Shown here: in pieces, positions 4,901 to 64,000 of the stretch
Position numbering within the stretch: the first letter of the stretch is position 1
Layout of the letters: the number at the start of each line of letters is the position of its first letter
Source: Tubulanus polymorphus
Lineage: Eukaryota; Animalia; Nemertea
Length of the DNA stretch: 64,000 nucleotides
Direction: 5' to 3'
NCBI RefSeq assembly: GCF_964204645.1
Contig: NC_134035.1
Span: 10,696,451 to 10,760,450, forward strand
The notes under the pieces: generated by a model
Databases searched by the model: none
What the model was told of the DNA's origin: nothing
What the model saw: the letters and a program-made list of their open reading frames with translations, nothing else
Made by a program: the position numbers and the translations under genes

Positions 4901-7900
4901 GAGACCTTCTCGGTTGTATAGCCCATCTAACGAACTTAATATCAAGTTAAGACCGGACTTAAAATTGAAGAGAATTTCTTGGACTTAGGTCTCGACTTTG
5001 GAACCGGCTGTCGGCTTATTGTGTGGAATCAGTAAACGCGAAGACGAATGGCGAAGACTTCGAAGATAAATTTCATTTCATCAAAATACCTTCAACGTAT
5101 AAATAGCTAATCCGCCCGATGAAACTAGTATACACAAGTCAAGCGAAACTTCGCACTTTTAATATGATTAAGTCGCTAAGGGCTATCACTGAGCTGAGCG
5201 TAGTCTACACCAGTACATTCTTCGTCGATTACACTTTCGTACATTATAGATGATAATGCCGAAGAAGTTATGGTTGTTTATTGCAATTGCCTAAGCGAAA
5301 GATTGCGTGAGAAATAACAAATTGATGGTGCGTTAATTAAACCAAGATCTCACGTATGCGTAAATGTCCCGTAAAGGTCCTGTAGCTATGTGCGTACTTT
5401 TTGTACGAGACAACGTCATAAATGGTTGCGAAACGCAATAAGTGATTTACGCGCGATACTCGAAGTTTGTTAATCTCCTGGTTATCTTTTGTGGATGTGT
5501 GTACGGCAAGTCTCCAGCGCTGGTTGGCAAACCAACGATGACGTCACGCGCAAGGCCTCTATCCGTATCAAATATTATAGGCATGATCGAAACAATTTAT
5601 AAATCTCTTAAAACGCATTTGAAACTTTCTGTTATTGATGTTTAATAGACGGAAATTTACGGAAGCGTCTTGGGACATTGAAAGAAACAAATCCATTTTG
5701 ATAGAGTCTGCAATCAGGGCCAACTTCGGTTGAGTTAGACGACTATAGCCCAACTAAGCGAAACCGAATTTCAGTGAGTCGGAACTATATTCCGGAAATA
5801 GTTCGGAGATCAAGCGCATTCGGTTATTAGTAAACCGACCACTAGCCGACTTAAGATACGAAAACCGAATTCTGCCCAGTGTGCGGCGGGCTTAAAAAAC
5901 TAAAGCCATTCGCCGACGATATTTACTAAACAATGTGATAGGAAAAATAGACTACGACTACAACACCGCAAGTCCAACACAATCCGAGGTTTATCCCTGT
6001 TGAAATAAATCATCGAAATCCAATCGTAAATCATCCGGCGCCGTTGAAACAAGTCGCACGCGTCACAAACGAACATCAATCAAATAACGTGTTGTTTTTG
6101 ATTTTGAATTCTTTCCCGAACGTCGACCCAGGTAAAATTACATGAAAAATGCAGAGCTGTATTAAAAGCGTTTGTGTCATCACGATCGCGAATGAAATCC
6201 CTAATGCTTCGTGGCAATGTTGATGGATTATAGCTGTAAAAAGACAACGCATACGGCAAAAAACCGGCAGTTGTGGCGCTCGTGAATAAATCATTTTTTT
6301 CTATATGAAGTTGTTTATTGAAGGCTGATAGATGTTATAAGACTTTTTTAATTACTTTGATCCGCCTCCCAGAATTCTGCAAATATCATCAAATTCATTC
6401 CTGCTATCATTTTAATCAAATTCATCACAATTTTGACTCCTCTAAAATTTAGGATAGGATAGGATAGGATGGATAGGATGGATAGGATGGATAGGATGGA
6501 TAGGATAGGATAGGATAGGATAGGAAGTAGAACAGAATTGTAGTTTATTTCTCTTTACACATCATCAACATCGATTTTACGATTTCGCTAATCCAGCAAA
6601 GGATAGCTGTGGCACGTCAGGATAGCCGTGGCACGTCAGGATAGCTGTGGCACGCCGAACGCTAAGGGTATTTAATGCGACCCGGTGCTAATTACATTTA
6701 TAAACTCGAAGCGAGTCTATTGTGTGCAACACAAGTTTCCCACTGTTTGCTCGGGTACACTTGTCGACCGTCGAAATAGCATTTCATCAATTGAAAAACA
6801 CTTCTAATTCGATGCGTTAAACCACAATTTAATTACCGTTCCTTTTCAGTTCCTTTTCAGTAACGATCGATGAAATAGCACCGTATAGTTAATCCGCGAA
6901 TGTCAGGCTGAATAACGATGCTTTTTAATTCACAATGCCACCGAGGTGAATGGAAACAGAAAAGAAACTTGCCTAGACGATAATACAAAGCAAACACGCT
7001 CCACGCTCCCTCTCCCTCTCCCTCTCCCGCTCCCTCTCCCTCTCCCTCTCCCTCTCCCTCTCCACGCTCCCTCTCCCTCTCCCTCTCCCTCTCCCTCTCC
7101 CTCTCCCTCTCCCTCTCCCTCTCCCTCTCCCTCTCCCTCTCCCTCTCCACGCTCCCTCTCCCTCTCCCTCTCCCTCTCCCTCTCCCTCTCCCTCTCCCTC
7201 TCCACGCTCCCTCTCCACGCTCCCTCTCCACGCTCCCTCTCCACGCTCCCTCTCCACGCTCCCTCTCCACGCTCCCTCTCCACGCTCCCTCTCCACGCTC
7301 CCTCTCCACGCTCCCTCTCCACGCTCCCTCTCCACGCTCCCTCTCCACGCTCCCTCTCCACGCTCCCTCTCCACGCTCCCTCTCCACGCTCCCTCTCCAC
7401 GCTCCCTCTCCACGCTCCCTCTCCACGCTCCCTCTCCACGCTCCCTCTCCACGCTCCCTCTCCACGCTCCCTCTCCACGCTCCCTCTCCACGCTCCCTCT
7501 CCACGCTCCCGCTCCCTCTCCCTCTCCCTCTCCCTCTCCCTCTCCCTCTCCCTCTCCCTCTCCCTCTCCCTCTCCCTCTCCCTCTCCCTCTCCCAATATA
7601 TATATGTAGTATGTACAGTATTCCTATACTTGAAGTGTTCTAGAACTGCGGAAGTGTATGTTACATAAAACGATTCGATTTTTTCATCGTAATTCTAGTC
7701 GTCGAATTCAACTGACGTCTATCGTAGGAAATCGGGTGATTATAAAACAAATAAATGAAACGCACAGAAAAATTGAATAGAATGATTCGAGCTTTTTTCC
7801 TTTCGATGAGAAGACAATGATACGTGTTTGCGTACAAACAAATTGTTGCATACATGATTATCAACGTTGAAGCTGTTCTCGACGATGCGGCCTCTTCTTT

Positions 7901-29181: not shown

Positions 29182-30597
29182 TCAGGTCACAATCGACGAC
29201 ATTGGTAACGATTCTTGCCTCGTCGAATGATTGTGTTGAACGAGCCAAAAATCGTCCAGAATCCGCGACGAAACACTTTCGACGCAAGTGTAACGTAGGT
29301 GCGTATCGTTGACCACTGCTAAACGCCCGAAGCTCTCAACACCGGCGACGGCGGATCTGAACGCCGACCATTCCGGTTTCGGGTTTACGGCGTCTTCGAA
29401 TACGTCCAAAAAGAACCACACAGCCGGTGAACCGTTGACGATATGAACGGGAGCTTTCGCGTCGACGTAGCTGTGACCGTACACGCTGAAATTGTAAACG
29501 GGCCACGATCGTTCGTACGAGTGCTCGTGACCGCTGACGATCAGGTCGACTCCCTGTTCGAAGAATAACCTCTCGACGCTCTCTCGAATGGCTGTTTGCA
29601 GACTGGAACAGTTCGTTTCGGGATTGATATAGTTCGAACAGTAGAGCGGTCGATGCCCGAATACTACTATCCACGGCCGCTGTTTGCGGTTCAGATTCGC
29701 TTTTTGTAAATCTTTGCGTAACCAGTCGTGCTGCTGTTTGATGTAGTGCGGTTGAAATTGGTACAGTTCCGTGTCGTAGAAAACAAAATGCGTTTTACCG
29801 AGATCGAAACTGTATCGCATTTCTCCCGTCGGAATCGGCCATTTCACGCCGGGCAAACTGAATCGATGTCGATAGTGTTTAAACAGCGATTGGTTTTCGT
29901 GATTGCCGGGAATCGTCAGGTATAACAGCTGGGACACGAGTGGCTCCATCTTGCGCATGAACGAGTCACCGTTCGGTTCGATATTATAGGCGATATCTCC
30001 CAGGTGTAGCACGGCGTCGTACGCTATCGATCGAAGTTGATATTCGTTCGTTAAAGCCTGCACGGTTTTTGAATGCACGCCGATGTCGCTGCCCACGAGT
30101 AAATTAACGATAGAATCGGCCGCGTTGTTAAACGTCCTGAACTGAAATACCGGCGAAGAATATCGATCCACGACCACTTTGTAGAAGTATATCGCGCCGG
30201 GAAGCAGTTTAGTCAATTCACATCTGTAAACATACGGAATGAAATACCCGGAATTGATCGAGTCTTCGATTTCTATCGTAACGGCTCGACATCTAGCTTC
30301 AAAACGCGCCGACTGCCTGCCGAACATAACGTATCCGCTACTGTCGATACGGCTCGTCCACATCACTACGACCTCGCTGTAATCAGAACCGGGTGAGATT
30401 CGGATTTGTTCCGGCCGCCCATCGACCAAACGTCGCAGAAGCTGTTTGCGATGTATCGCCGGCGCTAAATACCAGAGTAGAAACGTGCCGATTATAACGG
30501 CGATTATCACCAGTAACTTACGCGCGTACCTGCACGAGATGTAGTCATTGTTTTTAGTGTCCTGCCCGTCGGAAGAGATGACTTGATGTGGTGGCAT
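29182..30597 (-). CDS. ACP7: Purple acid phosphatase, ACP7/PAPL-like, intronless, with N-terminal membrane anchor (471 aa)
   Basis: All five purple acid phosphatase metal-ligand motifs in order: SDIG (DxG), GDIAY (GDxxY), GNHE, VFGH, GHEH. PEQI...V.W.T FN3-like N-domain and C-terminal APVHIVNG...WSAFR...FGRL.V.N.THL. TM segment LLVIIAVIIGTFLLWYL. Confidence 0.9.
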   Translation of the reverse strand: MPPHQVISSDGQDTKNNDYISCRYARKLLVIIAVIIGTFLLWYLAPAIHRKQLLRRLVDGRPEQIRISPGSDYSEVVVMWTSRIDSSGYVMFGRQSARFEARCRAVTIEIEDSINSGYFIPYVYRCELTKLLPGAIYFYKVVVDRYSSPVFQFRTFNNAADSIVNLLVGSDIGVHSKTVQALTNEYQLRSIAYDAVLHLGDIAYNIEPNGDSFMRKMEPLVSQLLYLTIPGNHENQSLFKHYRHRFSLPGVKWPIPTGEMRYSFDLGKTHFVFYDTELYQFQPHYIKQQHDWLRKDLQKANLNRKQRPWIVVFGHRPLYCSNYINPETNCSSLQTAIRESVERLFFEQGVDLIVSGHEHSYERSWPVYNFSVYGHSYVDAKAPVHIVNGSPAVWFFLDVFEDAVNPKPEWSAFRSAVAGVESFGRLAVVNDTHLRYTCVESVSSRILDDFWLVQHNHSTRQESLPMSSIVT

Positions 30598-32324: not shown

Positions 32325-33242
32325 ATAAACCGTTTCTACAAATCTAATGTGGGTTTTTATTCGTTAACTGTACTATATATTTATATCAGTTCGCTACAGA
32401 CAGTTAACACTATTCTTCCCCGTCGCTAGGCTGATAAAGATTGCACTCATCACTGCTAGAAAATTGATTTTTACTCACGTTAGAGCAATGCAGCCAACAA
32501 AATTATAAATTTTGAGTTTAAAAAGTCGGCTTTTTGAACTCGAAATGTCGTCTTACTCAAAAGTCGTAAAGTCGATGTTGTTGGCCATATTGCTCTTCCG
32601 TATAATAGCAGACTGATTGAAACGATAAGATTTTATCATGATACGTACGTCTAGTTTATTATCAAATAAAAAGTATTTAGAACTACAATGACGTGATCTA
32701 TCTTATTAAAGAATATGGATTAATAAGTGTCTTTTGCATCCTACAGTTTTATTTACAAATCATATAATGGTCGCTGATAACGGCCACAAACGCATTTCAA
32801 ATTCGGAAGAAAATGCGGTTCAAAAGAAAATTTGAAAGAAAATTTTTCAGCACTCACATCTTCTATGTCCTGAAAACAACTTGAAGGATTCGAAAGCATT
32901 TTTCAGTTGTTTAGAGGGCCTGAAACTTGTATTCAGTGCGTCCTGAAAACAGCTTTTTCAAGACCTTCTGAAATCAACTTCTAGGCCCTGAAAAGAACTT
33001 TAGTTGTCTTCAGCACCTCTGAAAACAATGGCCCAAACAAGACTTGTAATCGTGCGCTTACTTGGAATGTCATTGTATCTTGGGGTTGTAATCACTAATA
33101 ATTTCATTTCAGGTTAAAGTTGTTTCCTTGACTAACAAATTGTTTTGTGGACCAGAAAATCTTATTACAACAACCAACATTATTCTTCAAATCAATTTGA
33201 GATTTTGTGGCCCAAATTAGCCACCATATCGACCGATAACGT

Positions 33243-36200
33243 TTAGTAGATCAAAAACGATAAATCAAAAACTACAACGACAAATAAGAAAATTACGAAC
33301 AACAGTCTTTCCAGAACGATATTAGCCGTATCGTAAAACGTGTCGTGCAATGTACTGGTGGGTGTCGTGGTCGGTGAACTGCTGGAGATTTCGCGGTCTT
33401 CGCCCAACTGATCGTCATCGTCCGCGCCGTCCGGAGCTAAACGACGAACTCGAATATCTGCCGTATCACGCCTGACCAACAACAACTTCTCCAAACACTC
33501 GGTAACCTATTTCAAAAAAGTACTATGAAAAACAACAACTACCTACACATTTATAGAGTTTATTGCGAATTAAAAGGCGGGCGTAGGTCGGCTTTACGAC
33601 TGCAAGCTACTCGTAATCGACCGACGCACCCTCACGACCATTACGAACACCAGCGATACCTTGTGCACTGCCATCATATTATACTTTCCGCGATGTTTGC
33701 GGCCGTCTTTCTGAGTCGCAACATATTCTCCTTTTGTAACTGAAGCCCAACGCACCCGACGCACGGAAACACGGAAGAATTCTTTCCCGAAACAATGTTA
33801 CCCGCGTTTCTCGTAGACGCACACGACTCCGGAAAACGCACGGAAACATTATGTCTGTCTCCAGCTCCAGTGTTTCCCTGCGTCGTGTGCGTTGGGCTCG
33901 ACAGCTGACGAACACGTCACAGTCGACCTACGCACCCGTATCGCGATGCAGCTTAGAAATAAAAAGAAGTTCATTACCTGCTGAAAAGATCTTGGCGGTG
34001 GCGATGTAAAGCTGATCCGCGCTGCCGATGACGTCAGGTGAGCAATCAAATAAGCAATCACAGTCAGCAACATCGAAGATACATAGTAAACATCTAGAAT
34101 TAAACATCATTTTATTTACTTGAAAACCACGAATGTAGACTATAAATTTTCTGACTGACACATCATCACTTTACGTCGTCACAATTAGTAGAAGATATGA
34201 ATGAATTCGAAGTGTCCAAAAACATCTTCATGAAAAAAAATATATGTATAAAATCTTAGAGGTGTTCGTGGAGCCTCGTTCGCCTTGGCTTTCTACGTTG
34301 ATCAATAAATGACACGATAAGCATAAACTCGATTTAGAAAAAGGTCTCATACGACAGTCCGATAATCACAGTCAAATCTAATTCAGCCTCGTAGTTAGGA
34401 GGATCGTTATGTCGATGATATAATGATGACTCATACTGCATTTAATATTTCCTTTGAAATGGTGTATTAATTAAGTTAATCAAGCAAGGGACTGCAGAGC
34501 TATTTGATATTCAATCAATACTTATGTTTTAAAAATGAGCGAAAATTATCGCAACAATGGGGACCTCGAGGGACCACCACAAAATGGCGCCTAGAAACTT
34601 TTTTATCAGTAAATTGGAAATACTACTTCGGACACACAGACCGGCTTCAATGATGCGACAACTCATCCCATGACGTGGGAGTTGAGACTGCACTCACGTA
34701 TAATCGGAGGTTCACCAGTCGCTGTTAGTTCTTTGTCCGCCCACCATCGAGTATCACGAGGAAACGACTTCATGCTCATCATAAACAGGAACAGGTAAAT
34801 GAGTATCATTCCGACAACTGTAACATGAACAGGTAAATGAGTATCATTCCAACAACTGTAACAGGAACAGGTAAATGAGTAGCATTCCAACAACTGTAAC
34901 ATGAACAGGTAAATGAGTATCATTCCAACAACTGTAACAGGAACAGGTAAATGAGTATCATTCCAACAACTGTAACAGGAACAGGTAAATGAGTATCATT
35001 CCAACATCTGTAACAGGAACAGGTAAATGAGTATCATTCCAACAACTGTAACAGGAACAGGTAAATGAGTATCATTCCAACAACTGTAACAGGAACAGGT
35101 AAATGAGTATCATTCCAACAACTGTAACAGGAACAGGTAAATGAGTATCATTCCAACAACTGTAACAGGAACAGGTAAATGAGTATCATTCCAACAACTG
35201 TAACAGGAACAGGTAAATGAGTATCATTCCAACAACTGTAACAGGAACAGGTAAATGAGTATCATTCCAACAACTGTAACAGGAACAGGTAAATGAGTAT
35301 CATTCCAACAACTGTAACAGGAACAGGTAAATGAGTATCATTCCAACATCTGTAACAGGAACAGGTAAATGAGTATCATTCCAACAACTGTAACAGGAAC
35401 AGGTAAATGAGTATCATTCCAACAACTGTAACAGGAACAGGTAAATGAGTATCATTCCAACAACTGTAACAGGAACAGGTAAATGAGTATCATTCCAACA
35501 ACTGTAACAGGAACAGGTAAATGAGTATCATTCCAACAACTGTAACAGGAACAGGTAAATGAGTATCATTCCAACAACTGTAACATGAACAGGTAAATGA
35601 GTATCATTCCAACAACTGTAACAGGAACAGGTAAATGAGTATCATTCCAACAACTGTAACAGGAACAGGTAAATGAGTATCATTCCAACAACTGTAACGA
35701 ATCATACACAATCAACAATATCAATTATTCGCCATAGTCGAATTTTTCTTCTGGATGAATTTGAGCGTGTATGTGATTGTGTGATTGTAGCAAAGTGTGT
35801 TGAGGTGACCCTTTTTACAAGCATTTTGTTTCGATTATTATTATACGATCATAACAGAATATTCAATCCATCGTCAACATCTGATATCTAAATAAATGCT
35901 AATGATCATTTTGATTTGTTATACGTGATGACAAACAACGATACGTTAATTTCATAAGAATGTTGCATTTAATCGATTAAAATCGCTCCTTAATCTTCCA
36001 AAAATCTTAATATTAATGCCAGAATTAGGTCGCCTCTGACCCAAACTCATCTCGGCGGTATCCTCCCTCGGCAGCCGTGGTTGATGCCATCAGGTTCGAA
36101 TCCTTGCCGAGGAAGGATGTTCGGTGGGCGACAAACAAACTCTCGGGCAAGTGAGGATGATACCTGTTATGTGACGAGCTGCAACACCGCGGCCACGAAA

Positions 36201-39200
36201 TAGAAAAAGCATCGGAATCATGAGATTCAGGCAGATCGCGGGCGCCACGAATACAAGAACTCCTCGCAGAAGAGATCTGCGTACGGTGAACTGGTACACG
36301 ATTGTCTCGGTCGTTTCACGGGTTTGCGTTGTTCGATTTCGCACCAGACGTTTGCCTTTTTCCAACAACCAGATGTCGGACGTTTTCTGAGGCAATTCTG
36401 GATACCGGGTGGCTATGATTCGCCAGGGTGACGCGTCCGACACGGCGTGTACGTTGTACTGAATTAGAAAATAGAAGATTTTTTCACTCATTTAGATTCA
36501 CAAACATATCAAAAATCTCTTCATCGGTAATTCAAAGCTTATCCGTTAAAATCACTGTCAATCAGAGGCCTGAAATATGCGACTGTACAAAAAGTCGTTT
36601 CTAGAAATAGACAAAGTAAAAATGAGCGTATGTAATGCTTGTATATGTTGGCGTACTACTTTGGCATTTCGGGGACGTAGTTGGGATTGTGACGTTGATA
36701 CCGATTTAGCTAACTTGGAAAAACCCAGGAAACTTTTAACTGAGAAAACTAGTTCATTTTGACTTAGCTAACTCTGAATAATCCTCAGAATTGAGGAAAT
36801 ATTTATTCCGAATTAAGAAACTTTGAATTTCGAAGATGAGTCACATTTAGAAATGATTCACTAGTTTTATTTCGAGTATCTAACTCTGTATAGACGTCAA
36901 CGTTTCTTCTTACGAAAACGACCGATGCAGGACGCTTCCGTATAATCATTCGAAATAGTTCACAAACGATAGAAACCTATACCTTTTGTTTAACGAGGTT
37001 ATCGTCGATCTCGACTGCTAGTTCACATTTGTGTACATCGAATGGAAATCGGTACTTGCTGATAGCGCAGTATATCGAATTCTGTAGCCAGTTGTTGAAA
37101 CGAACGACGCCGGACCGATCTACATGCGCGTACGAGTTCCCATAGCCGTACAGACTCGGTAGCCAGGAAAATCTATAACAAAGAAAAATGCAAAAGTATG
37201 ATATGATATGATTAATTTTCAAGTAAGATTTCTACAAAAAAAATTAATGAATAAGGAAATGCATTAAACGTGTATAATATTAAATGAGTTCCTGCTTTGA
37301 AGCAACATTTAGCTTATACAAGAAAGCAGCCCATGAAAGAGGACAAAATATACACGAGATGGAAATAAACGAAAGAAAACCGACATAATACGGATATGAT
37401 AACGACATACATGTACATAACAAATACACATACATCATACATATACATACATATACACATACAACCATACTTATACTTATAAATGTTTTTAAGTGATATT
37501 TCTTTATGATGCGTATTCACTATATATAGTAACTTGCATCCAATCCACGTGCAGTTGTAAATAGTCATGATTGGTTCATTTTTTATGTTTCCCCCAGTCG
37601 AAATACAGCTGAATCTGATTTTCTGGTTCGTATTTGAGGAGTCTTACTCACCCGTGTACTATCTGAAATTTGGGTTTCCAGATTTTTCCGATGGACAGCG
37701 AAACGGAGTCGATGGAGCCATACTTTTTTGGGTCCCACGAGAGTCTCGAATCTTTCCACACCTATTCGTACATGAAAATCGTACCCGCACGAATGAATAT
37801 GCGTTTTAGATATTTCAGCAGAAATGAAATGAGATGATGTTTCATTTGCTTGAACTTACTATCTCTACTTGACCTCTAGGCCAGACTAGACTGTAAGCAG
37901 GATTCTGGAATTCAGTACAATTTTCATAAGACACTCATTTAATCATATTTATCAGACTCTTATACTTTCAATTGAATCGCTCTTAATGTTTCGTTTTTGG
38001 TACGATACGTTAGGATATGATATCTGTTTTCTCCTATATCCAACTTAATACAAAACAAAAAGTCTTAACAGAATCATGGAGGGGACCACAGAGGAGCCTG
38101 GAGGCTGTAATCTATGGGACATAGACCTCTGTGAGAACAAATAAAACAATGACAAAAAGAAAAAACAAACTGACTTATGATAAATGAACAAATGAGTCAA
38201 GAGGTTGTGAAGTGAAAAATAAATAAAAGGAAAAGGTAGCACAAGACTGAATTATTTCAATACTTTAATACATCGATGTACTATCAATTCAAATGGTAGC
38301 ATAACGTATTATTTTTCAGAAGTAAGCATTATCATTTTTTTATACATAAGAAACTCGATAGCTGTTCTCGGTGAAATGCCTTACTTACCACTGCCGCTAT
38401 GGCCGCAATATCGATGCCCATTTTGATAGTGATTTTCTTGCCGAGGGGTTTATTCGGTTTAACGCCGATAGCTGGTCGTATGTTGGTCTCGTAGTCTTTC
38501 ATTAGATCCGTAATCAAACGATGTTTATCGTTGTAAAACTTTTTTTCTAAAGCACACAAGCGAAGAGTGCTAGAAGCATTTAGTACGTTCCAAAAAGAAT
38601 AATGAAGCGCGTCGATTAGATCAATCCAACTTAAGATTATTTTCTAATAGGGTAGGTGTGAGGAAAATATGGGAGGGTAAGTTTTTTTTGTTTTGTTGGA
38701 ACTGAACGGGGGTCTAGTAGCCCTCTCCGGAAAAAAATGATGCTCAGATATGGTTTTGATTCCCGTTGATATAACGAAGGTCTAAATAAATGAACAAAAT
38801 CTTATATATATATACTTGTATTAGATCGAGAAAGTTGTAAGAGGAAAACGTTTCTGTTTGATAATCTTTTAAAATAAAAAAAAACTATCGGAACTACGGT
38901 CCCGCATAGCTACAATACTACCCGAGTAACTTTCATGTACTTAAAAAATGTATGCGGAATTTTCTTACAACATTAAACATTTTCTGGAAGACCGTCTGTC
39001 ATGGGGTGAAGATTATATAATTCTAAAAAGTAAATATAGCTGCAAAGCAGCAATAATGGGTTTTTACTGGATAGCAGCATCACAAATATGCATATCTTTG
39101 GAAATTAAAAATTGAAATGTAAAAGAATGTTTATCGTCGGGGATTCGAACTTAATATGACTGATATAACTACGTCGTCAATGTAGTACATCACCTCAAAT

Positions 39201-41501
39201 ATATTGAACTTACAAATTACTTTCGATACGACAACGTGCGAACAAGCACTATGAGACTTTAAAAAAAACGGTTACTTAAATTGACCATATATAATAATTA
39301 ATATAAGATCAACGTCTGCAACAATTGGAAAGTCTTACGGGTTGCTGGGTTTGTTGTTGGTTCTGTTGTTTTCTGTGTAGGTGAAACTGTAGAACTTGGT
39401 TCCGTTGTAGTCTGTATAGACGGCGCTGACGTAGTTCTTGCCTTCGCGGCGACGTCTGGATAAAACAGTTTATGGTCTATTACCGAAACAACCGTCGAGC
39501 CGAGTGTCTATTGTTTTACTAAAGTTGAAATCGATTACACCTACCCGAACATAATGGTACGTTACAGTATTCCCAGCGTTTACCGGGATTCAGAGTATAA
39601 CACCACGGTCCTTCAGGTTCATTATCCGGGTTCCTACAGTAATTCTCCGCTGTTGTCTTATCGTCCAGCTTCGAATATAACCTGTGTTTATGCGGTGTTT
39701 GTCTATCCCAGCGCTGACATTTCCAACCGCTTCGTGTTTCGCTCGTTTCGCCGCGATATTCAGCGCCTTTTTTACTGGTTTTACATTCACAGAACTCTAT
39801 ATCGCAGTACTCCCAGCGTTTACCGGGATTCAGAGTATAACACCACGGTCCGTCCGGTTCATTATCCGGGTTCCTGCAGTAATTCTCCGCTGTTGTCTTA
39901 TCGACCAGCATCGAATATGCACTGTGATTATGCGGTGTTTGACTATCCCAGCGCTGACATTTCAAACCGCTTCGAGTCGTATTCGCTATGCCTTGATAAT
40001 CGCGACCTGTCCGTGTAGTTTTACATTCAGGAGCCATCCCCGGACAGAACCTTATATTACAGTACTCCCAGCGTGTATCGGGGTCCATCGTATAACACCA
40101 GGGTCCTAAAGGTTCATCATCAGGATTCCTGCAGTAATTGGAAGCTGTGCCCTGGTCGGAGAGCATATCGTAGCGGGTATGTTTATGAGGTGATTGAGAA
40201 TTCCAGGCTTGACACTTTTTACCAGATTTTGTTTGGCCCAAACGTCCTCTGTATTCTTTACCGGTTGTGGTAGTTTTACAAGTTTCACCTGATTAAAGTA
40301 AATGTATTATCTCTATAATCTGATTCTTTGAACTGCGAAGCAGCGATCATGGGTTTTCTGCCAATAATCGATCATTAAATTCTTCATTTTATTTTAGAAA
40401 TAAATCGATGCGTAAACTATTTTATCGTTCTGGACACTGATAACAACTTTGACGTACAGTAATTGAACTGGCTAACACAACGAAAAATATTTCGAAAACT
40501 ACGGTCGATCCAGAGTCTGACATTCTAAGACGTTTCCACGAAGCCATATCGCAGCGAAAACTGTCGATATGCTTTATGCTTTGATAAGAATGCTGACGAA
40601 CAGTGACCTACCGGCTCTAATACAAAACAGTTTCTACTCATTCTGCCTTAACTATTGACTATAAAATGATACTCGGGCTTTAATCCACATTCAAACCTCT
40701 TAGGAACAATATGTTCTTACGAGCAACGTTATACAACAAGAAACTTTCCAAGCCTATACATATCATTCAAAAGCCTTTAAAACCTATGCAAATGAATTTT
40801 AGACCCTCTGGGGGACGAACCGAGGAGTGAATCAAAATCAAGACACTCGGAATCTGTGGATATTGGGGTTAAAATCCTAGTAAATTCGGTAGATTTCCAA
40901 GAGCCATTGGCTTTAATTAACTTTTGGCGATTATCTGCTTCGAAAGGGGACGGAAAATGATGATTATATTAGTCCGGAGAAAAGCAATAGGGTTTTTGTT
41001 AAAAGTATATAGCCCATTTTAAAGTGTCTATTCTAAGACAATATGTCAGTCACGATAGACTCTGAAGCCTGTATGCGAAAGAAAGGGAAAATACAAAAGA
41101 TCGGTACCAAAATGAGTTCCGGGCTCGCTGTGGTTGCTGGGTTTCTTGCAACGTTGATGGAATAGGAATCTGATTATATTGGTGTACGCTAAGCGCAAAT
41201 CAATGACATAACTCCAAACATCGCCAATTCTAAACTGGCTTGAAGATGGGGTTGTGCGGCTCCAGTCGCTTCATATTGAAAGAAAGCAGGTTCACTTACT
41301 TGAAATTTAAGCCGAAAGCGGGGATTCAAAATTAACTATATTTTCCGTTTTCTTCGCATCCAGACGTTTTTAACCCCGCACAGAGCGCGTTGATGGCATC
41401 AAGTCTTTTCATCACAAACAACCTGTCAACTTACCTTCATCCTTGTCACATAAAGCATTAGTCAACAGCAACGTAAATGTAAACAGACATTGCAAAATCA
41501 T
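33243..41501 (-). CDS. Pentameric Cys-loop ligand-gated ion channel subunit (divergent nAChR-like) with three N-terminal kringle domains, 11 exons, 741 aa
   Basis: Exons 41501-41435 (signal peptide MILQCLFTFTLLLTNALC), 40288-39545 (3 kringles, NYCRNPD..P.GPWCYT), 39455-39339 (T/P/S linker), 38546-38389 (RLITDLMKDYETNIRP), 37904-37860 (45 nt), 37761-37652 (110 nt; VWKDSRLSWDPKKYGSI...IWKP), 37172-36983 (Cys-loop C-AISKYRFPFDVHK-C), 36458-36164 (YQFTVRR plus M1), 34817-34698 (M2), 34093-33978 (M3), 33506-33243 (M4, VLERLLFVIF). All junctions are GT-AG and in phase; total 2226 nt. Confidence 0.85.
33745..33897. mobile_element. MITE (family B) with about 27-bp TIRs GCCCAACGCAC[A/C]CGACGCA[C/G]GGAAACAC
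   Basis: Inverted termini are visible. Homologous pieces lie at 66-179 (ending GGGCTTAA) and 18427-18797 (interrupted by the Penelope-like palindrome). Confidence 0.65.
34537..34600 (+). repeat. Short interspersed repeat (family D)
   Basis: GAAAATTATCGCAACAATGGGGA.CTCGAGG.ACC.CC.CAAAATGG.GCCTAGAAACT recurs at 62676-62739 and, inverted and diverged, at about 15945-16004. Confidence 0.65.
34784..35698. repeat. Minisatellite of 24 x 38 bp (AACAGGAACAGGTAAATGAGTATCATTCCAACAACTGT) derived from the M2-exon acceptor of the ion channel gene
   Basis: 912 bp = 24 near-identical units. On the minus strand the unit reads GTTACAG|TTGTTGGAATGATACTCATTTACCTGTTCCT. Confidence 0.97.
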
Positions 41502-42052
41502 CTTCTTTTGTATGGACGTTTTTTTTAGAAAATCTCCTCGCGAACGCTCGACGCCTACTCGTCCAGCGCGATCAGCCACACTTCTACAGTTTGCCGAGTA
41601 TACGATTTTCTATGTCACAATCTATTAAGTGTATTACGGAAACAATATTCTATTGTTTGCGCTGGAATTTTATCATCCACTTTGAAACTGTGTAGGCCAA
41701 AGGGATCAGACATCTATATATAGTAAATAAGCAGCGTATATTCGAAATAAAAATCTCGCCCGATCGAGACATTAATGATTCTGAAGTTTTATAGTCTTAT
41801 GTCAGGAAATATTTTTTTTCTAGAATTAGAAAGTATTCATATATACAGCAATCTTCATCACCGTACCCGAGTCAGTGTATACACAAGTGATAAGGATGTA
41901 GCCCGTACAGAAAGTAAAACTAATGCGGTTGTTAGCGTTGATTGACTTCACGGTAGTAAAAGAGAAACGATGATCTTCGATAAGTCGGTAATTCGTATTC
42001 CTCGTTGGCGTCTTTGATTCGGTATCGGATACCGAATACTACACAGTACGTA

Positions 42053-47899: not shown

Positions 47900-48076
47900 G
47901 CCGGGGAGAGACTCAATTTAGAGAGGGAGAGAGGGAGAGAGGGAGAGAGGGAGAGAGGGAGAGAGGGAGAGAGGGAGAGAGGGAGAGAGGGAGAGAGGGA
48001 GAGAGGGAGAGAGGGAGAGAGGGAGAGGGAGAGGGAGAGGGAGAGGGAGAGGGAGAGGGAGAGGGAGAGGGAGAGA
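47900..48076. repeat. Polypurine (GAGAGG/GAGAGAGG)n repeat
   Basis: Direct reading. Confidence 0.95.
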
Positions 48077-62700: not shown

Positions 62701-63642
62701 GATCTCGAGGAACCGCCGCAAAATGGTGCCTAGAAACTGTTCCAGAAAAAAACTTCATCTTTTACCAATACTTTTGTTTCAGATCTAAGGACTTAAGTCC
62801 TTGTCAAGAATAACAACTATCCATTAACGAGGTTTTTATAAGTAAAATATCAAGCGACGTCTCTGTGGAGATAGATCCACAGATAGATAGACTCGCAGAA
62901 ATGCAGGTGGATGAAACATTAGTTCACGCAAACCGACAACACATCTTTTCAGTAGTACTTACCGAGAGAACAATAAACGACGCGTTAGTACTTAGTGATT
63001 TCATATAATCGGAGGTTCATGCACCGGGCATGGCGTACACTGATTTTTGCTAGTGCGATTCAAGACACACGGGTCTTATCTTTGATGTAAGGTGTTGCAT
63101 TATACAATGACCTTCAACTTTGTTTCATCATAATTCAAGTTTACCATTTTGATAATCGACCATTCCCGCGCTCGAGGGACTTTTGCGAACGAGTCTATAA
63201 AGCCAACGGAATCTCATCTATATTGTTTAAGGTTTGCTTTGGAAGAATGGAAAAGAAGAAGCAGCCACTGGCGGACGTTGCCTTTCCGGGCCCAGGGGAG
63301 TCGAGCTCAGTTTGTACTGGTATATTCTATTTGTTGGAAGAACGGGGTCCGATGTCGAGTCTTTGTGTCGGTTGCTTCACCGAAAATCAAAAGCTTTTTA
63401 TAGAAAAGGAAAGACGATATATCGTAAATCAGTCGTCAACGACATTCATTGGCAAGTTATCGTAGATATCATCTATCCGATATTTGCCGTAAGAGATACA
63501 TTTCATCTAATTGTGGAATTCACCAGTTCGCCTTAGTGTGTTCGCATAACCACCTGAGGGTCGCAATTCAATGGAGTAATAAATGTACGCTAACAAGTAA
63601 GACACTTCTTTCGAATGTAAACTGATACGTAGATGAGGTATG

Positions 63643-64000
63643 AGGGAGGGAGGGAGGGATAGAGGGAGAGAGGGAGAGAGGGAGAGAGGGAGAGAGGGAG
63701 AGAGGGAGAGAGGGAGAGAGGGAGAGAGGGAGAGAGGGAGAGAGGGAGAGAGAGGGAGAGGGGGAGAGGGGGAGAGGGGGAGAGAGGGAGAGAGGGAGAG
63801 AGGGAGAGAGGGAGAGAGGGGGAGAGGGAGAGAGGGAGAGAGGGAGAGAGGGAGAGAGGGAGAGAGGGAGAGAGGGAGAGAGGGAGAGAGGGAGAGAGGG
63901 AGAGAGGGAGAGAGGGAGAGAGGGAGAGAGGGAGAGAGGGAGAGAGGGAGAGAGGGAGAGAGGGAGAGAGGGAGAGAGGGAGAGAGGGAGAGAGGGAGAG
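63643..64000. repeat. (GAGAGAGG)n polypurine repeat running off the window end
   Basis: Direct reading. Confidence 0.97.

What the first reader, a model, noticed from the sequence alone, without database searches (positions are those of the whole stretch)
34698..35698. A 24-copy minisatellite made of the splice acceptor and first 31 nt of the pore-lining M2 exon
Seen: the 38-bp unit on the minus strand is GTTACAG|TTGTTGGAATGATACTCATTTACCTGTTCCT, i.e. acceptor plus VGMILIYLF of M2. The pre-mRNA therefore presents about 24 tandem acceptors. Because 38 is not a multiple of 3, splicing to an upstream copy shifts frame and in consensus units reaches TGA (TTG TTG GAA TGA) in the next unit. Only the last acceptor (exon start 34817, which uniquely reads GTC rather than GTT) gives a full channel. 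Inference: either the spliceosome skips 23 decoys, or acceptor choice or array length controls the ratio of full channel to NMD/truncated product (kringle-LBD-M1), or this allele was recently disabled by repeat expansion.
Basis: partly seen in the sequence, partly recalled or inferred. Interest (0 to 1): 0.8.

Follow-up and report, generated by a model that had tools for sequence, protein, structure and literature searches.

The report
Splice-acceptor minisatellite in worm receptor gene
In a ribbon worm's divergent acetylcholine-receptor-like gene, a 38-base piece spanning an intron end and the start of the M2 exon has been copied 24 times in tandem; this is a real but already described kind of repeat (a "mirage" minisatellite) that most likely sits harmlessly in the intron while splicing uses the last, genuine copy.

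Summary
Window 34784-35698 carries 24.1 head-to-tail copies of a 38-base unit at 98% identity, found nowhere else in the 268-Mb genome. On the minus strand each unit is gttacag plus the first 31 bases of the M2 exon of a Cys-loop receptor gene of the nemertean Tubulanus polymorphus (RefSeq XP_074660426.1).

- **One correction:** 22 of the 23 decoy acceptors reach TGA after 16 codons. The acceptor of copy 21 is in frame and open, because copy 22 carries a change that removes the TGA.
- **RNA evidence:** a 2014 run shows the M2, M3 and last exons spliced together and no array sequence. Its contig stops 49 bases short of the acceptor.
- **Public model:** the RefSeq model joins M1 to the last acceptor.

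This kind of repeat is known: the "mirage" minisatellites of amphioxus and the human F7 intron 7 repeat, where the extra sites stay silent. The scan has already found at least eight such arrays on other DNA of this genome.

Most likely it is a tolerated intronic expansion spliced at the exon-proximal site. A regulatory role has no support. Interest is low to moderate.

The parts
34784..35698 (-). 38-base minisatellite, 24.1 copies. Each unit is 7 intron bases (gttacag) plus the first 31 exon bases.
   Evidence: TRF; per-copy listing; unique in the genome
34787..34824 (-). Copy 24, the genuine junction. Its acceptor AG is followed by exon start 34817, and it is the only copy with GTC.
   Evidence: The RefSeq protein P0001 reads ...ARHIT-V-VGMILIYLFLFMMSMK across this junction.
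34698..34817 (-). M2 exon (120 bases), ending at donor TTATAC|gtgagt
   Evidence: Its 3' end is fixed by an RNA joint 34093/34698 in run X5. Its translation aligns with M2 of Torpedo gamma.
34863..34938 (-). Copies 21 and 22. Acceptor 21 (exon start 34931) is in frame. Copy 22 has A>C at 34882, which turns the TGA into TGC, so this one decoy gives an open +38-codon reading.
   Evidence: also the 86-aa ORF 34663-34923
35699..36163 (-). Original, non-repeated part of the M1-M2 intron. The intron is 1346 bases now and would be 472 without the 23 extra copies.
36164..36458 (-). Exon coding the end of the ligand-binding domain, M1 and the M1-M2 loop. Its donor is TAACAG|gtatca, phase 1.
   Evidence: 100% match to residues 191-288 of P0001
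33978..34093 (-). M3 exon
   Evidence: RNA joints in X5; translation
33243..33506 (-). Last coding exon (short cytoplasmic loop, M4, stop)
   Evidence: RNA joint in X5; translation
34447..34599 (.). 153-base dispersed repeat inside the M2-M3 intron. It is not part of the array but lies 185 bases from it.
   Evidence: Depth of 180-190 per strand and loose ends at 34447 and 34599. 467 first-look candidates genome-wide, with scored copies 92-96% identical.

Best explanation
This is a 'mirage' minisatellite. A short tandem duplication that happened to span the 3' splice junction of the M2 exon was later expanded to 24 copies by slippage or unequal exchange. The founding duplication was probably seeded by the 3-base GTT found at both ends of the unit. 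Because the duplication spans the junction, all extra copies lie upstream of the genuine exon. They are removed as intron if splicing uses the last, exon-proximal acceptor, and the mRNA is then unchanged. The last acceptor most likely wins by position and not by sequence. It is the only one followed by the rest of the exon, including a purine-rich stretch (ATGATGAGCATGAAG) and a strong donor 120 bases downstream (exon definition). Any transcript spliced to a decoy meets TGA after 16 codons, with two exon junctions still downstream, and would be expected to be degraded. Shown here: the array, its uniqueness, the frames, transcription and correct splicing of the downstream exons, and the public model's use of the last acceptor. 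Inferred: which acceptor the cell uses, the exon-definition mechanism, and degradation of decoy products.
For: - **Array:** it is real and unique.
- **Support from another run:** in DNA run X1 the consensus-cycle contig has word depth 421.8 against 27-30 for single-copy flanks, about 14-16 fold. The assembly predicts 18.4. A long array is therefore supported outside the assembly itself.
- **RNA:** run X5 has one contig joining 34698-34768 | 33976-34093 | 33431-33504 with GT..AG ends on the minus strand. It has zero depth over the ten array copies laid.
- **Public model:** RefSeq XP_074660426.1 joins M1 to exon start 34817.
- **Downstream exons:** they are open. Differences between strains are synonymous in M3 and absent in M2.
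- **Variants:** the only variant in the genuine copy is synonymous, while the three variant types in decoys would all change an amino acid.
- **Precedent:** amphioxus mirages do not disturb splicing (PMC3087553, PMC3902484). The F7 IVS7 37-base repeat has functional but silent pseudo-sites (PMC1557585).
- **Same genome:** a 30-base x 34-copy array of acceptor plus exon start exists 3.17 Mb away. Earlier notes list at least eight such loci.
Against: - No read or contig crosses the M1-M2 junction. The X5 contig stops at 34768, 49 bases short of the acceptor.
- The RefSeq protein is a predicted model, and I could not see its evidence.
- Acceptors 2-24 are almost identical in sequence, with 14-15 pyrimidines in 20 and the same branch-point-like CTCAT and TTTAC. 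The last one follows a copy with the weaker CAT variant. Sequence alone therefore gives no reason for the last to win.
- The tool warns that absence of array words in RNA contigs proves nothing.
- The gene is a fast-evolving singleton. Its M1 exon has no relative in 1.84 billion representatives other than its own model, so selection against a leaky array may be weak.
Confidence: 0.68

Rival explanations
1. Leaky decoys act as a dosage knob. A sizeable share of transcripts is spliced to decoy acceptors and lost to a premature stop, so array length sets how much full-length receptor is made.
For: The decoy acceptors are complete modules with branch-point-like motifs, a pyrimidine tract of 14-15 in 20, and AG. 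They are richer in pyrimidines than the native first acceptor, which has 11 in 20. Copy number may vary. The Illumina DNA run X6, from another study, shows depth of about 4.4 over the ten copies laid against about 6.9 in the flanks, which fits roughly 5-10 copies and not 24. X1 gives about 15 against the expected 18.4. RNA depth of the gene is low, at 3-4.
Against: No decoy-spliced RNA was seen, and array words are absent from X5 contigs. Arrays of the same kind sit in many unrelated genes of this genome, including housekeeping ones (earlier notes, mostly untested by me), which argues for a by-product. In the documented cases the extra sites stay silent (PMC3087553, PMC1557585). The X6 copy estimate rests on about ten reads.
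Confidence: 0.17
2. Disabled allele or dying gene. The expansion makes the first acceptors win, every product is truncated after M1, and this lineage-specific receptor gene is on its way to becoming a pseudogene.
For: Under intron definition the acceptors nearest the donor would be favoured. The gene is very divergent: the transmembrane part fails Pfam PF02932 and no relatives were found for the M1 exon. The last exon carries three amino-acid differences between strains.
Against: All downstream exons are open and correctly spliced in RNA. The M2 and M3 exons show only synonymous or no differences between strains. The Cys-loop and the whole ligand-binding domain are intact (Pfam 1.7e-24). The array is young, 98% identical, so absence of decay says little either way.
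Confidence: 0.1
3. Assembly artefact: the copy number was inflated by the assembler.
For: Tandem arrays are error-prone in assemblies. X1 word depth gives about 15 against the expected 18.4, and X6 looks shorter.
Against: X1 word depth is still 14-16 times single copy, so an array of about 19-20 copies on average is present in reads. The ordered pattern of seven private variants, for example T8A in copies 10 and 19 and C37A in copies 3, 21 and 23, is not what a collapsed or inflated repeat looks like. X1 may be the source sample, so this support is not fully independent.
Confidence: 0.04

Closest known systems
'Mirage' minisatellites of amphioxus (Adh3, troponin C, globins BflGb6 and BflGb9, PGBD5)
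   Same: They are tandem repeats whose unit spans an exon-intron boundary and so copies a splice signal plus a piece of exon. Units of 10-160 bases are reported. The arrays vary in length between haplotypes, edge copies escape homogenisation, and the mRNA is reported as normal (PMC3087553, PMC3902484, citing Canestro et al. 2002, which I could not read). Here too the variants cluster at the edges, in copies 3 and 19-24.
   Different: The phylum differs (Nemertea, not Cephalochordata). There are 24 copies, against 3-6 in the globin case read. Normal splicing was not shown directly here. One decoy has become in frame and open.
Human F7 intron 7 37-base VNTR
   Same: It is a minisatellite of almost the same unit length whose terminal unit spans an exon-intron boundary, giving a row of identical splice sites. 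Only the exon-adjacent site is used, although the others are functional (PMC1557585).
   Different: In F7 the donors (5' sites) are repeated and the genuine one is the first. Here the acceptors (3' sites) are repeated and the genuine one is the last. The oriented-scanning mechanism shown for 5' sites cannot simply be carried over.
Other junction-spanning arrays in this same genome
   Same: They are in the same species, and the unit has the same build of intron end plus exon start. I confirmed the ITFG2 array myself (30 bases x 34 copies, unit tatttctgtgtag + GTACTGTGATATTACTG on the minus strand).
   Different: Those notes stress very short introns, for example 79 bases. Here the intron was already 472 bases long. 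The host gene here is a divergent singleton and not a housekeeping gene.
NAGNAG and other tandem-acceptor alternative splicing
   Same: Several acceptors in a row compete for one donor.
   Different: Those acceptors lie 3 bases apart and give in-frame isoforms. Here the spacing is 38 bases, 22 of the 23 alternatives are out of frame or stopped, and there is no evidence of use.

Membership tests
Mirage minisatellite (junction-spanning tandem repeat) | Head-to-tail repeat with a minisatellite-sized unit | tested here: met
   Period 38, 24.1 copies, 98% identity
Mirage minisatellite (junction-spanning tandem repeat) | Unit spans an exon-intron boundary and copies the splice signal | tested here: met
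   The unit is gttacag plus 31 exon bases. The boundary is placed by phase and frame and by the public protein, which reads across it. All 24 copies keep the AG.
Mirage minisatellite (junction-spanning tandem repeat) | Regular splicing is not disturbed | tested here: inconclusive
   Downstream exons are spliced normally and no array words occur in the RNA contigs. The RefSeq model uses the last acceptor. No read across the M1-M2 junction was obtained.
Mirage minisatellite (junction-spanning tandem repeat) | Length instability between alleles or individuals | tested here: inconclusive
   X6 depth over the array is about 0.6 of the flanks although only 10 of 24 copies were offered. X1 gives about 15 against the expected 18.4. 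The read numbers are small, and no spanning reads were obtained.
Cys-loop (pentameric) ligand-gated ion channel subunit (host gene) | Neurotransmitter-gated channel ligand-binding domain with a C-x13-C loop | tested here: met
   Pfam PF02931 at 1.7e-24 over positions 2-215 of 216. CAISKYRFPFDVHKC is present in P0001.
Cys-loop (pentameric) ligand-gated ion channel subunit (host gene) | Four-helix transmembrane domain (Pfam PF02932) | tested here: inconclusive
   There is no PF02932 match at E up to 0.1. However, four hydrophobic segments lie in the right places, and phmmer alignment to Torpedo gamma runs through M1 and M2 (E 3e-12).
NAGNAG-type tandem acceptor alternative splicing | Acceptors a few bases apart giving in-frame isoforms that are seen in RNA | tested here: not met
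   The spacing is 38 bases, 22 of 23 alternatives stop after 16 codons, and no isoform was seen.

The most novel reading that the evidence does not exclude
The array is not silent. Array length, which seems to differ between animals, sets the share of transcripts lost to decoy acceptors and so tunes the amount of this receptor. The one decoy that has become open (acceptor 21) may also yield a rare isoform with 38 extra residues before M2. More broadly, this worm's many 3' junction arrays would form a natural series for asking how a spliceosome picks the exon-proximal acceptor among dozens of identical ones. That would be the 3' counterpart of the F7 donor-scanning work.
Probability: 0.12. Interest if true: 0.55.

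Novelty: new member of a known kind. Interest (0 to 1): 0.25.

Why it matters
On its own it matters little. It is one more junction-spanning minisatellite of a kind described in amphioxus and in human F7, and the scan has already met several in this genome. Three things give it some value.

- The repeats seem common outside cephalochordates, in a nemertean, which I did not find reported in the papers searched.
- With 23 near-identical decoy acceptors, each carrying its own branch-point-like motif and pyrimidine tract, it is a clean natural test of position against sequence in 3' splice-site choice.
- Gene predictors can easily mis-model such loci, so the annotation should be checked against RNA.

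Tried and rejected
As the tool itself advised, I laid a part with ten copies.
- **Word-based protein search with the M1 exon** found nothing.
- **The exhaustive representative search** found only the gene's own RefSeq model, so no orthologue could be used to compare junctions.
- **The look-up of encoding contigs for P0001** returned nothing.
- **Searches of the own genome with the M1 and M2 exon translations** found no paralogue with which to compare the ancestral junction. The only other hit was a weak 45% match on contig 4.
- **Rfam** has nothing in 33000-37000.
- **A paper search for kringle plus Cys-loop** found no paper.
- **Canestro et al. 2002 (PMC117041)** is not held, so the original mirage description is cited second hand.
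- **A coding role for the array** is rejected. No frame stays open for more than about 35 codons on either strand, apart from the copy 21-24 reading.
- **A transposon origin for the unit** is rejected, because the unit occurs nowhere else in the genome.
- **A joined (spliced) model of my own** was not built or searched. Exons were searched one by one by reference, and the only full-length protein used was the public one returned by a tool (P0001).

Full report
**1. The observation**

Tandem Repeats Finder reports one array at window 34784-35698: period 38, 24.1 copies, 98% matches, no indels, score 1781. Read on the minus strand, the unit is GTTACAG followed by TTGTTGGAATGATACTCATTTACCTGTTCCT.

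A copy-by-copy listing shows:
- 17 copies are identical to the consensus.
- Seven copies carry one change each: C37A in copies 3, 21 and 23; T8A in copies 10 and 19; A19C in copy 22; T12C in copy 24.
- All 24 copies keep TTACAG.
- The variants cluster at the two edges of the array.
- The pair of T8A copies lies nine units apart, which suggests an internal block duplication.
- After the last full unit the sequence goes on with GTT, the first three bases of the unit. A 3-base microhomology therefore brackets the founding duplication.

A pattern search with up to three mismatches finds 24 matches in the whole assembly (267.8 Mb, 77 contigs), all at this place, and none for the reversed control. 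The array is real in the assembly, far beyond chance, and is not a dispersed element.

**2. The host gene**

On the minus strand, the exon ORFs at 38332-38559, 37648-37761 and 36977-37222 match Pfam Neur_chan_LBD. An ORF at 39519-40241 holds three kringles.

The exon 36164-36458 codes the end of the ligand-binding domain, M1 and the M1-M2 loop. Searched by reference against 1.84 billion representative proteins, this exon hits one protein only, at 100% identity. That protein is P0001, 454 aa, which is XP_074660426.1, 'acetylcholine receptor subunit gamma-like [Tubulanus polymorphus]'. The organism is therefore a palaeonemertean ribbon worm.

Evidence on P0001:
- It matches the ligand-binding domain over its full length (1.7e-24).
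- It does not match the Pfam transmembrane model.
- phmmer aligns it with Torpedo gamma subunit through M1 and M2, pairing ITVVGMILIYLFLFMMSMK with [20 protein letters not shown].
- The own genome holds no close paralogue of the M1 or M2 exon.

Exons were searched singly by reference, and the only full-length protein used is the public one that a tool returned.

**3. Frames**

The M1 exon ends in phase 1 (…ACA G|gt). One search gives these readings:
- From the last acceptor (exon start 34817) the reading is V-VGMILIYLFLFMMSMKSFPRDT…, exactly as in P0001.
- The acceptor of copy 21 (exon start 34931, 114 bases upstream) is in frame. The TGA it would meet in copy 22 has become TGC through the A>C change at 34882, so this reading stays open and adds 38 residues before M2.

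My rough estimate is that a random change would do this about 2% of the time. That estimate is post hoc, and I treat the change as a curiosity. The extra segment would add a hydrophobic stretch in front of M2 and would probably spoil the channel.

**4. Reads**

As the tool advised, I laid 32500-35166, which holds ten copies. That used the single call allowed.

- **Run X5 (2014, contigs)** is RNA.
  - One 263-base contig joins 34698-34768, 33976-34093 and 33431-33504, with GT..AG ends on the minus strand. The gene is therefore transcribed, and the M2, M3 and last exons are spliced as in P0001.
  - The contig stops at 34768, 49 bases short of the acceptor, so the acceptor used was not seen.
  - X5 has no depth at all over the array copies. 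If decoys were used, array words would be many times commoner in RNA than exon words. This absence points to the last acceptor or to rapid decay, but the tool warns that holes prove nothing.
- **Run X1 (DNA contigs, possibly the source sample)**
  - It has a 68-base consensus-cycle contig at word depth 421.8, against 27-30 for the flanks, about 14-16 fold.
  - The assembly predicts 18.4, so a long array is backed by reads.
- **Run X6 (raw Illumina DNA from another study, about 7x, about 2% divergent)**
  - Depth is about 4.4 over the ten copies offered, against about 6.9 in the flanks.
  - With 24 copies I would expect about 16, so this animal may carry only some 5-10 copies.
  - The estimate rests on about ten reads and is only a hint of length variation.

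**5. Is the gene alive?**

The M2, M3 and last exons are open. Between X6 and the window, the M3 exon has two synonymous differences, the M2 exon has none, and the cytoplasmic loop of the last exon has three amino-acid changes. The single change in the genuine copy is synonymous (GTT to GTC), while the three kinds of change in decoys would alter the protein. These are small numbers, but they all point to the last copy being the coding one.

**6. Why the last acceptor?**

Acceptors 2-24 have almost the same upstream 45 bases. Each has 14-15 pyrimidines in 20, with CTCAT and TTTAC as branch-point-like motifs at about -21 and -17. The native first acceptor has 11 in 20. Sequence therefore cannot single out the last copy; position must. 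Only the last copy is followed by the rest of the exon, with its purine-rich ATGATGAGCATGAAG, and by the strong donor TAC|gtgagt 120 bases on. This fits exon definition, but it is an inference.

A decoy-spliced transcript would carry a stop 48 bases into the exon, with two junctions still downstream. By established knowledge of nonsense-mediated decay it would be a target. That was not tested in this animal.

**7. What is known**

Earlier notes of this scan gave me the lead 'mirage', and I checked the papers.
[quoted passage not shown] They are also described in globin, troponin C and PGBD5 genes, with units of 10-160 bases, length differences between haplotypes, edge copies excluded from homogenisation, and normal mRNA (PMC3087553; PMC3902484). 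The original paper is not held.
- The human F7 gene has a 37-base repeat in intron 7 whose first unit spans the exon 7 donor. The pseudo-sites are functional but silent, and the exon-adjacent site is chosen (PMC1557585).
At 3.17 Mb beyond my window there is a 30-base x 34-copy array at 96% identity. On the minus strand its unit is an intron end (tatttctgtgtag) plus an exon start, and the last copy runs on into an open exon ending at a gtaag donor. That 8-kb stretch carries several further minisatellites.

The scan has thus found this kind of thing before, on other DNA of this genome, at least eight times.

**8. Verdict**

The best reading is a young, tolerated junction-spanning minisatellite that enlarged a 472-base intron to 1346 bases, with splicing at the exon-proximal acceptor (confidence about 0.68).

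| Rival reading | Confidence |
|---|---|
| Dosage role through decoy use | about 0.17 |
| Disabled allele | about 0.10 |
| Assembly artefact | about 0.04 |

It is a new member of a known kind. The decisive test is simply to count junction reads from donor 36164.

Noticed in passing
window 39519-40241 and 41412-41579 (minus strand): The public RefSeq model (P0001 = XP_074660426.1) joins the signal-peptide exon (MILQCLFTFTLLLTNALCDKDE, near 41500) straight to the first ligand-binding exon (38332-38559). It skips the 240-aa three-kringle ORF that lies between them. Whether a kringle-bearing isoform exists is open.
   Followed up: partly
window 34447-34599: A 153-base dispersed repeat sits in the M2-M3 intron. 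Read depth is 180-190 per strand in a 7x run, with sharp loose ends at both borders. There are 467 first-look candidates in the genome, and the scored copies are 92-96% identical. Some copies lie as nearby inverted pairs, which suggests ends of a DNA transposon or a MITE.
   Followed up: partly
window 34784-35698, plus strand: Read on the opposite strand, every unit holds ACAG|GTAAATGAGT, a near-consensus 5' splice site. An antisense transcript would therefore meet 24 tandem donors. No plus-strand gene or ORF was seen there.
   Followed up: no
window 36165-36458 (minus) and P0001: The receptor is extremely divergent. Its 98-aa M1 exon has no relative at E up to 0.001 among 1.84 billion representative proteins other than its own model. 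The transmembrane half also fails Pfam PF02932, although the ligand-binding half is a clear match.
   Followed up: partly
window 6999-7587; 47920-48076; 63642-64000: The window holds other tandem arrays: a 13-base unit (CTCCACGCTCCCT) x 46 copies, and two GA-rich 8-base arrays. The last of these runs off the window end.
   Followed up: no
L012 2561-6238 (G000:C11:13930560-13934237): Minisatellites are densely packed near the end of the same contig: 33 bases x 11, 30 bases x 34 (the ITFG2 junction array), 24 bases x 13.5, and 45 bases x 19.4.
   Followed up: partly
window 29182-30597 (minus): There is an intronless 471-aa ORF just downstream of the receptor gene. By eye it has metallophosphoesterase-like motifs (GDIAYN, GNHE, GHEHSYER). 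I did not scan it.
   Followed up: no
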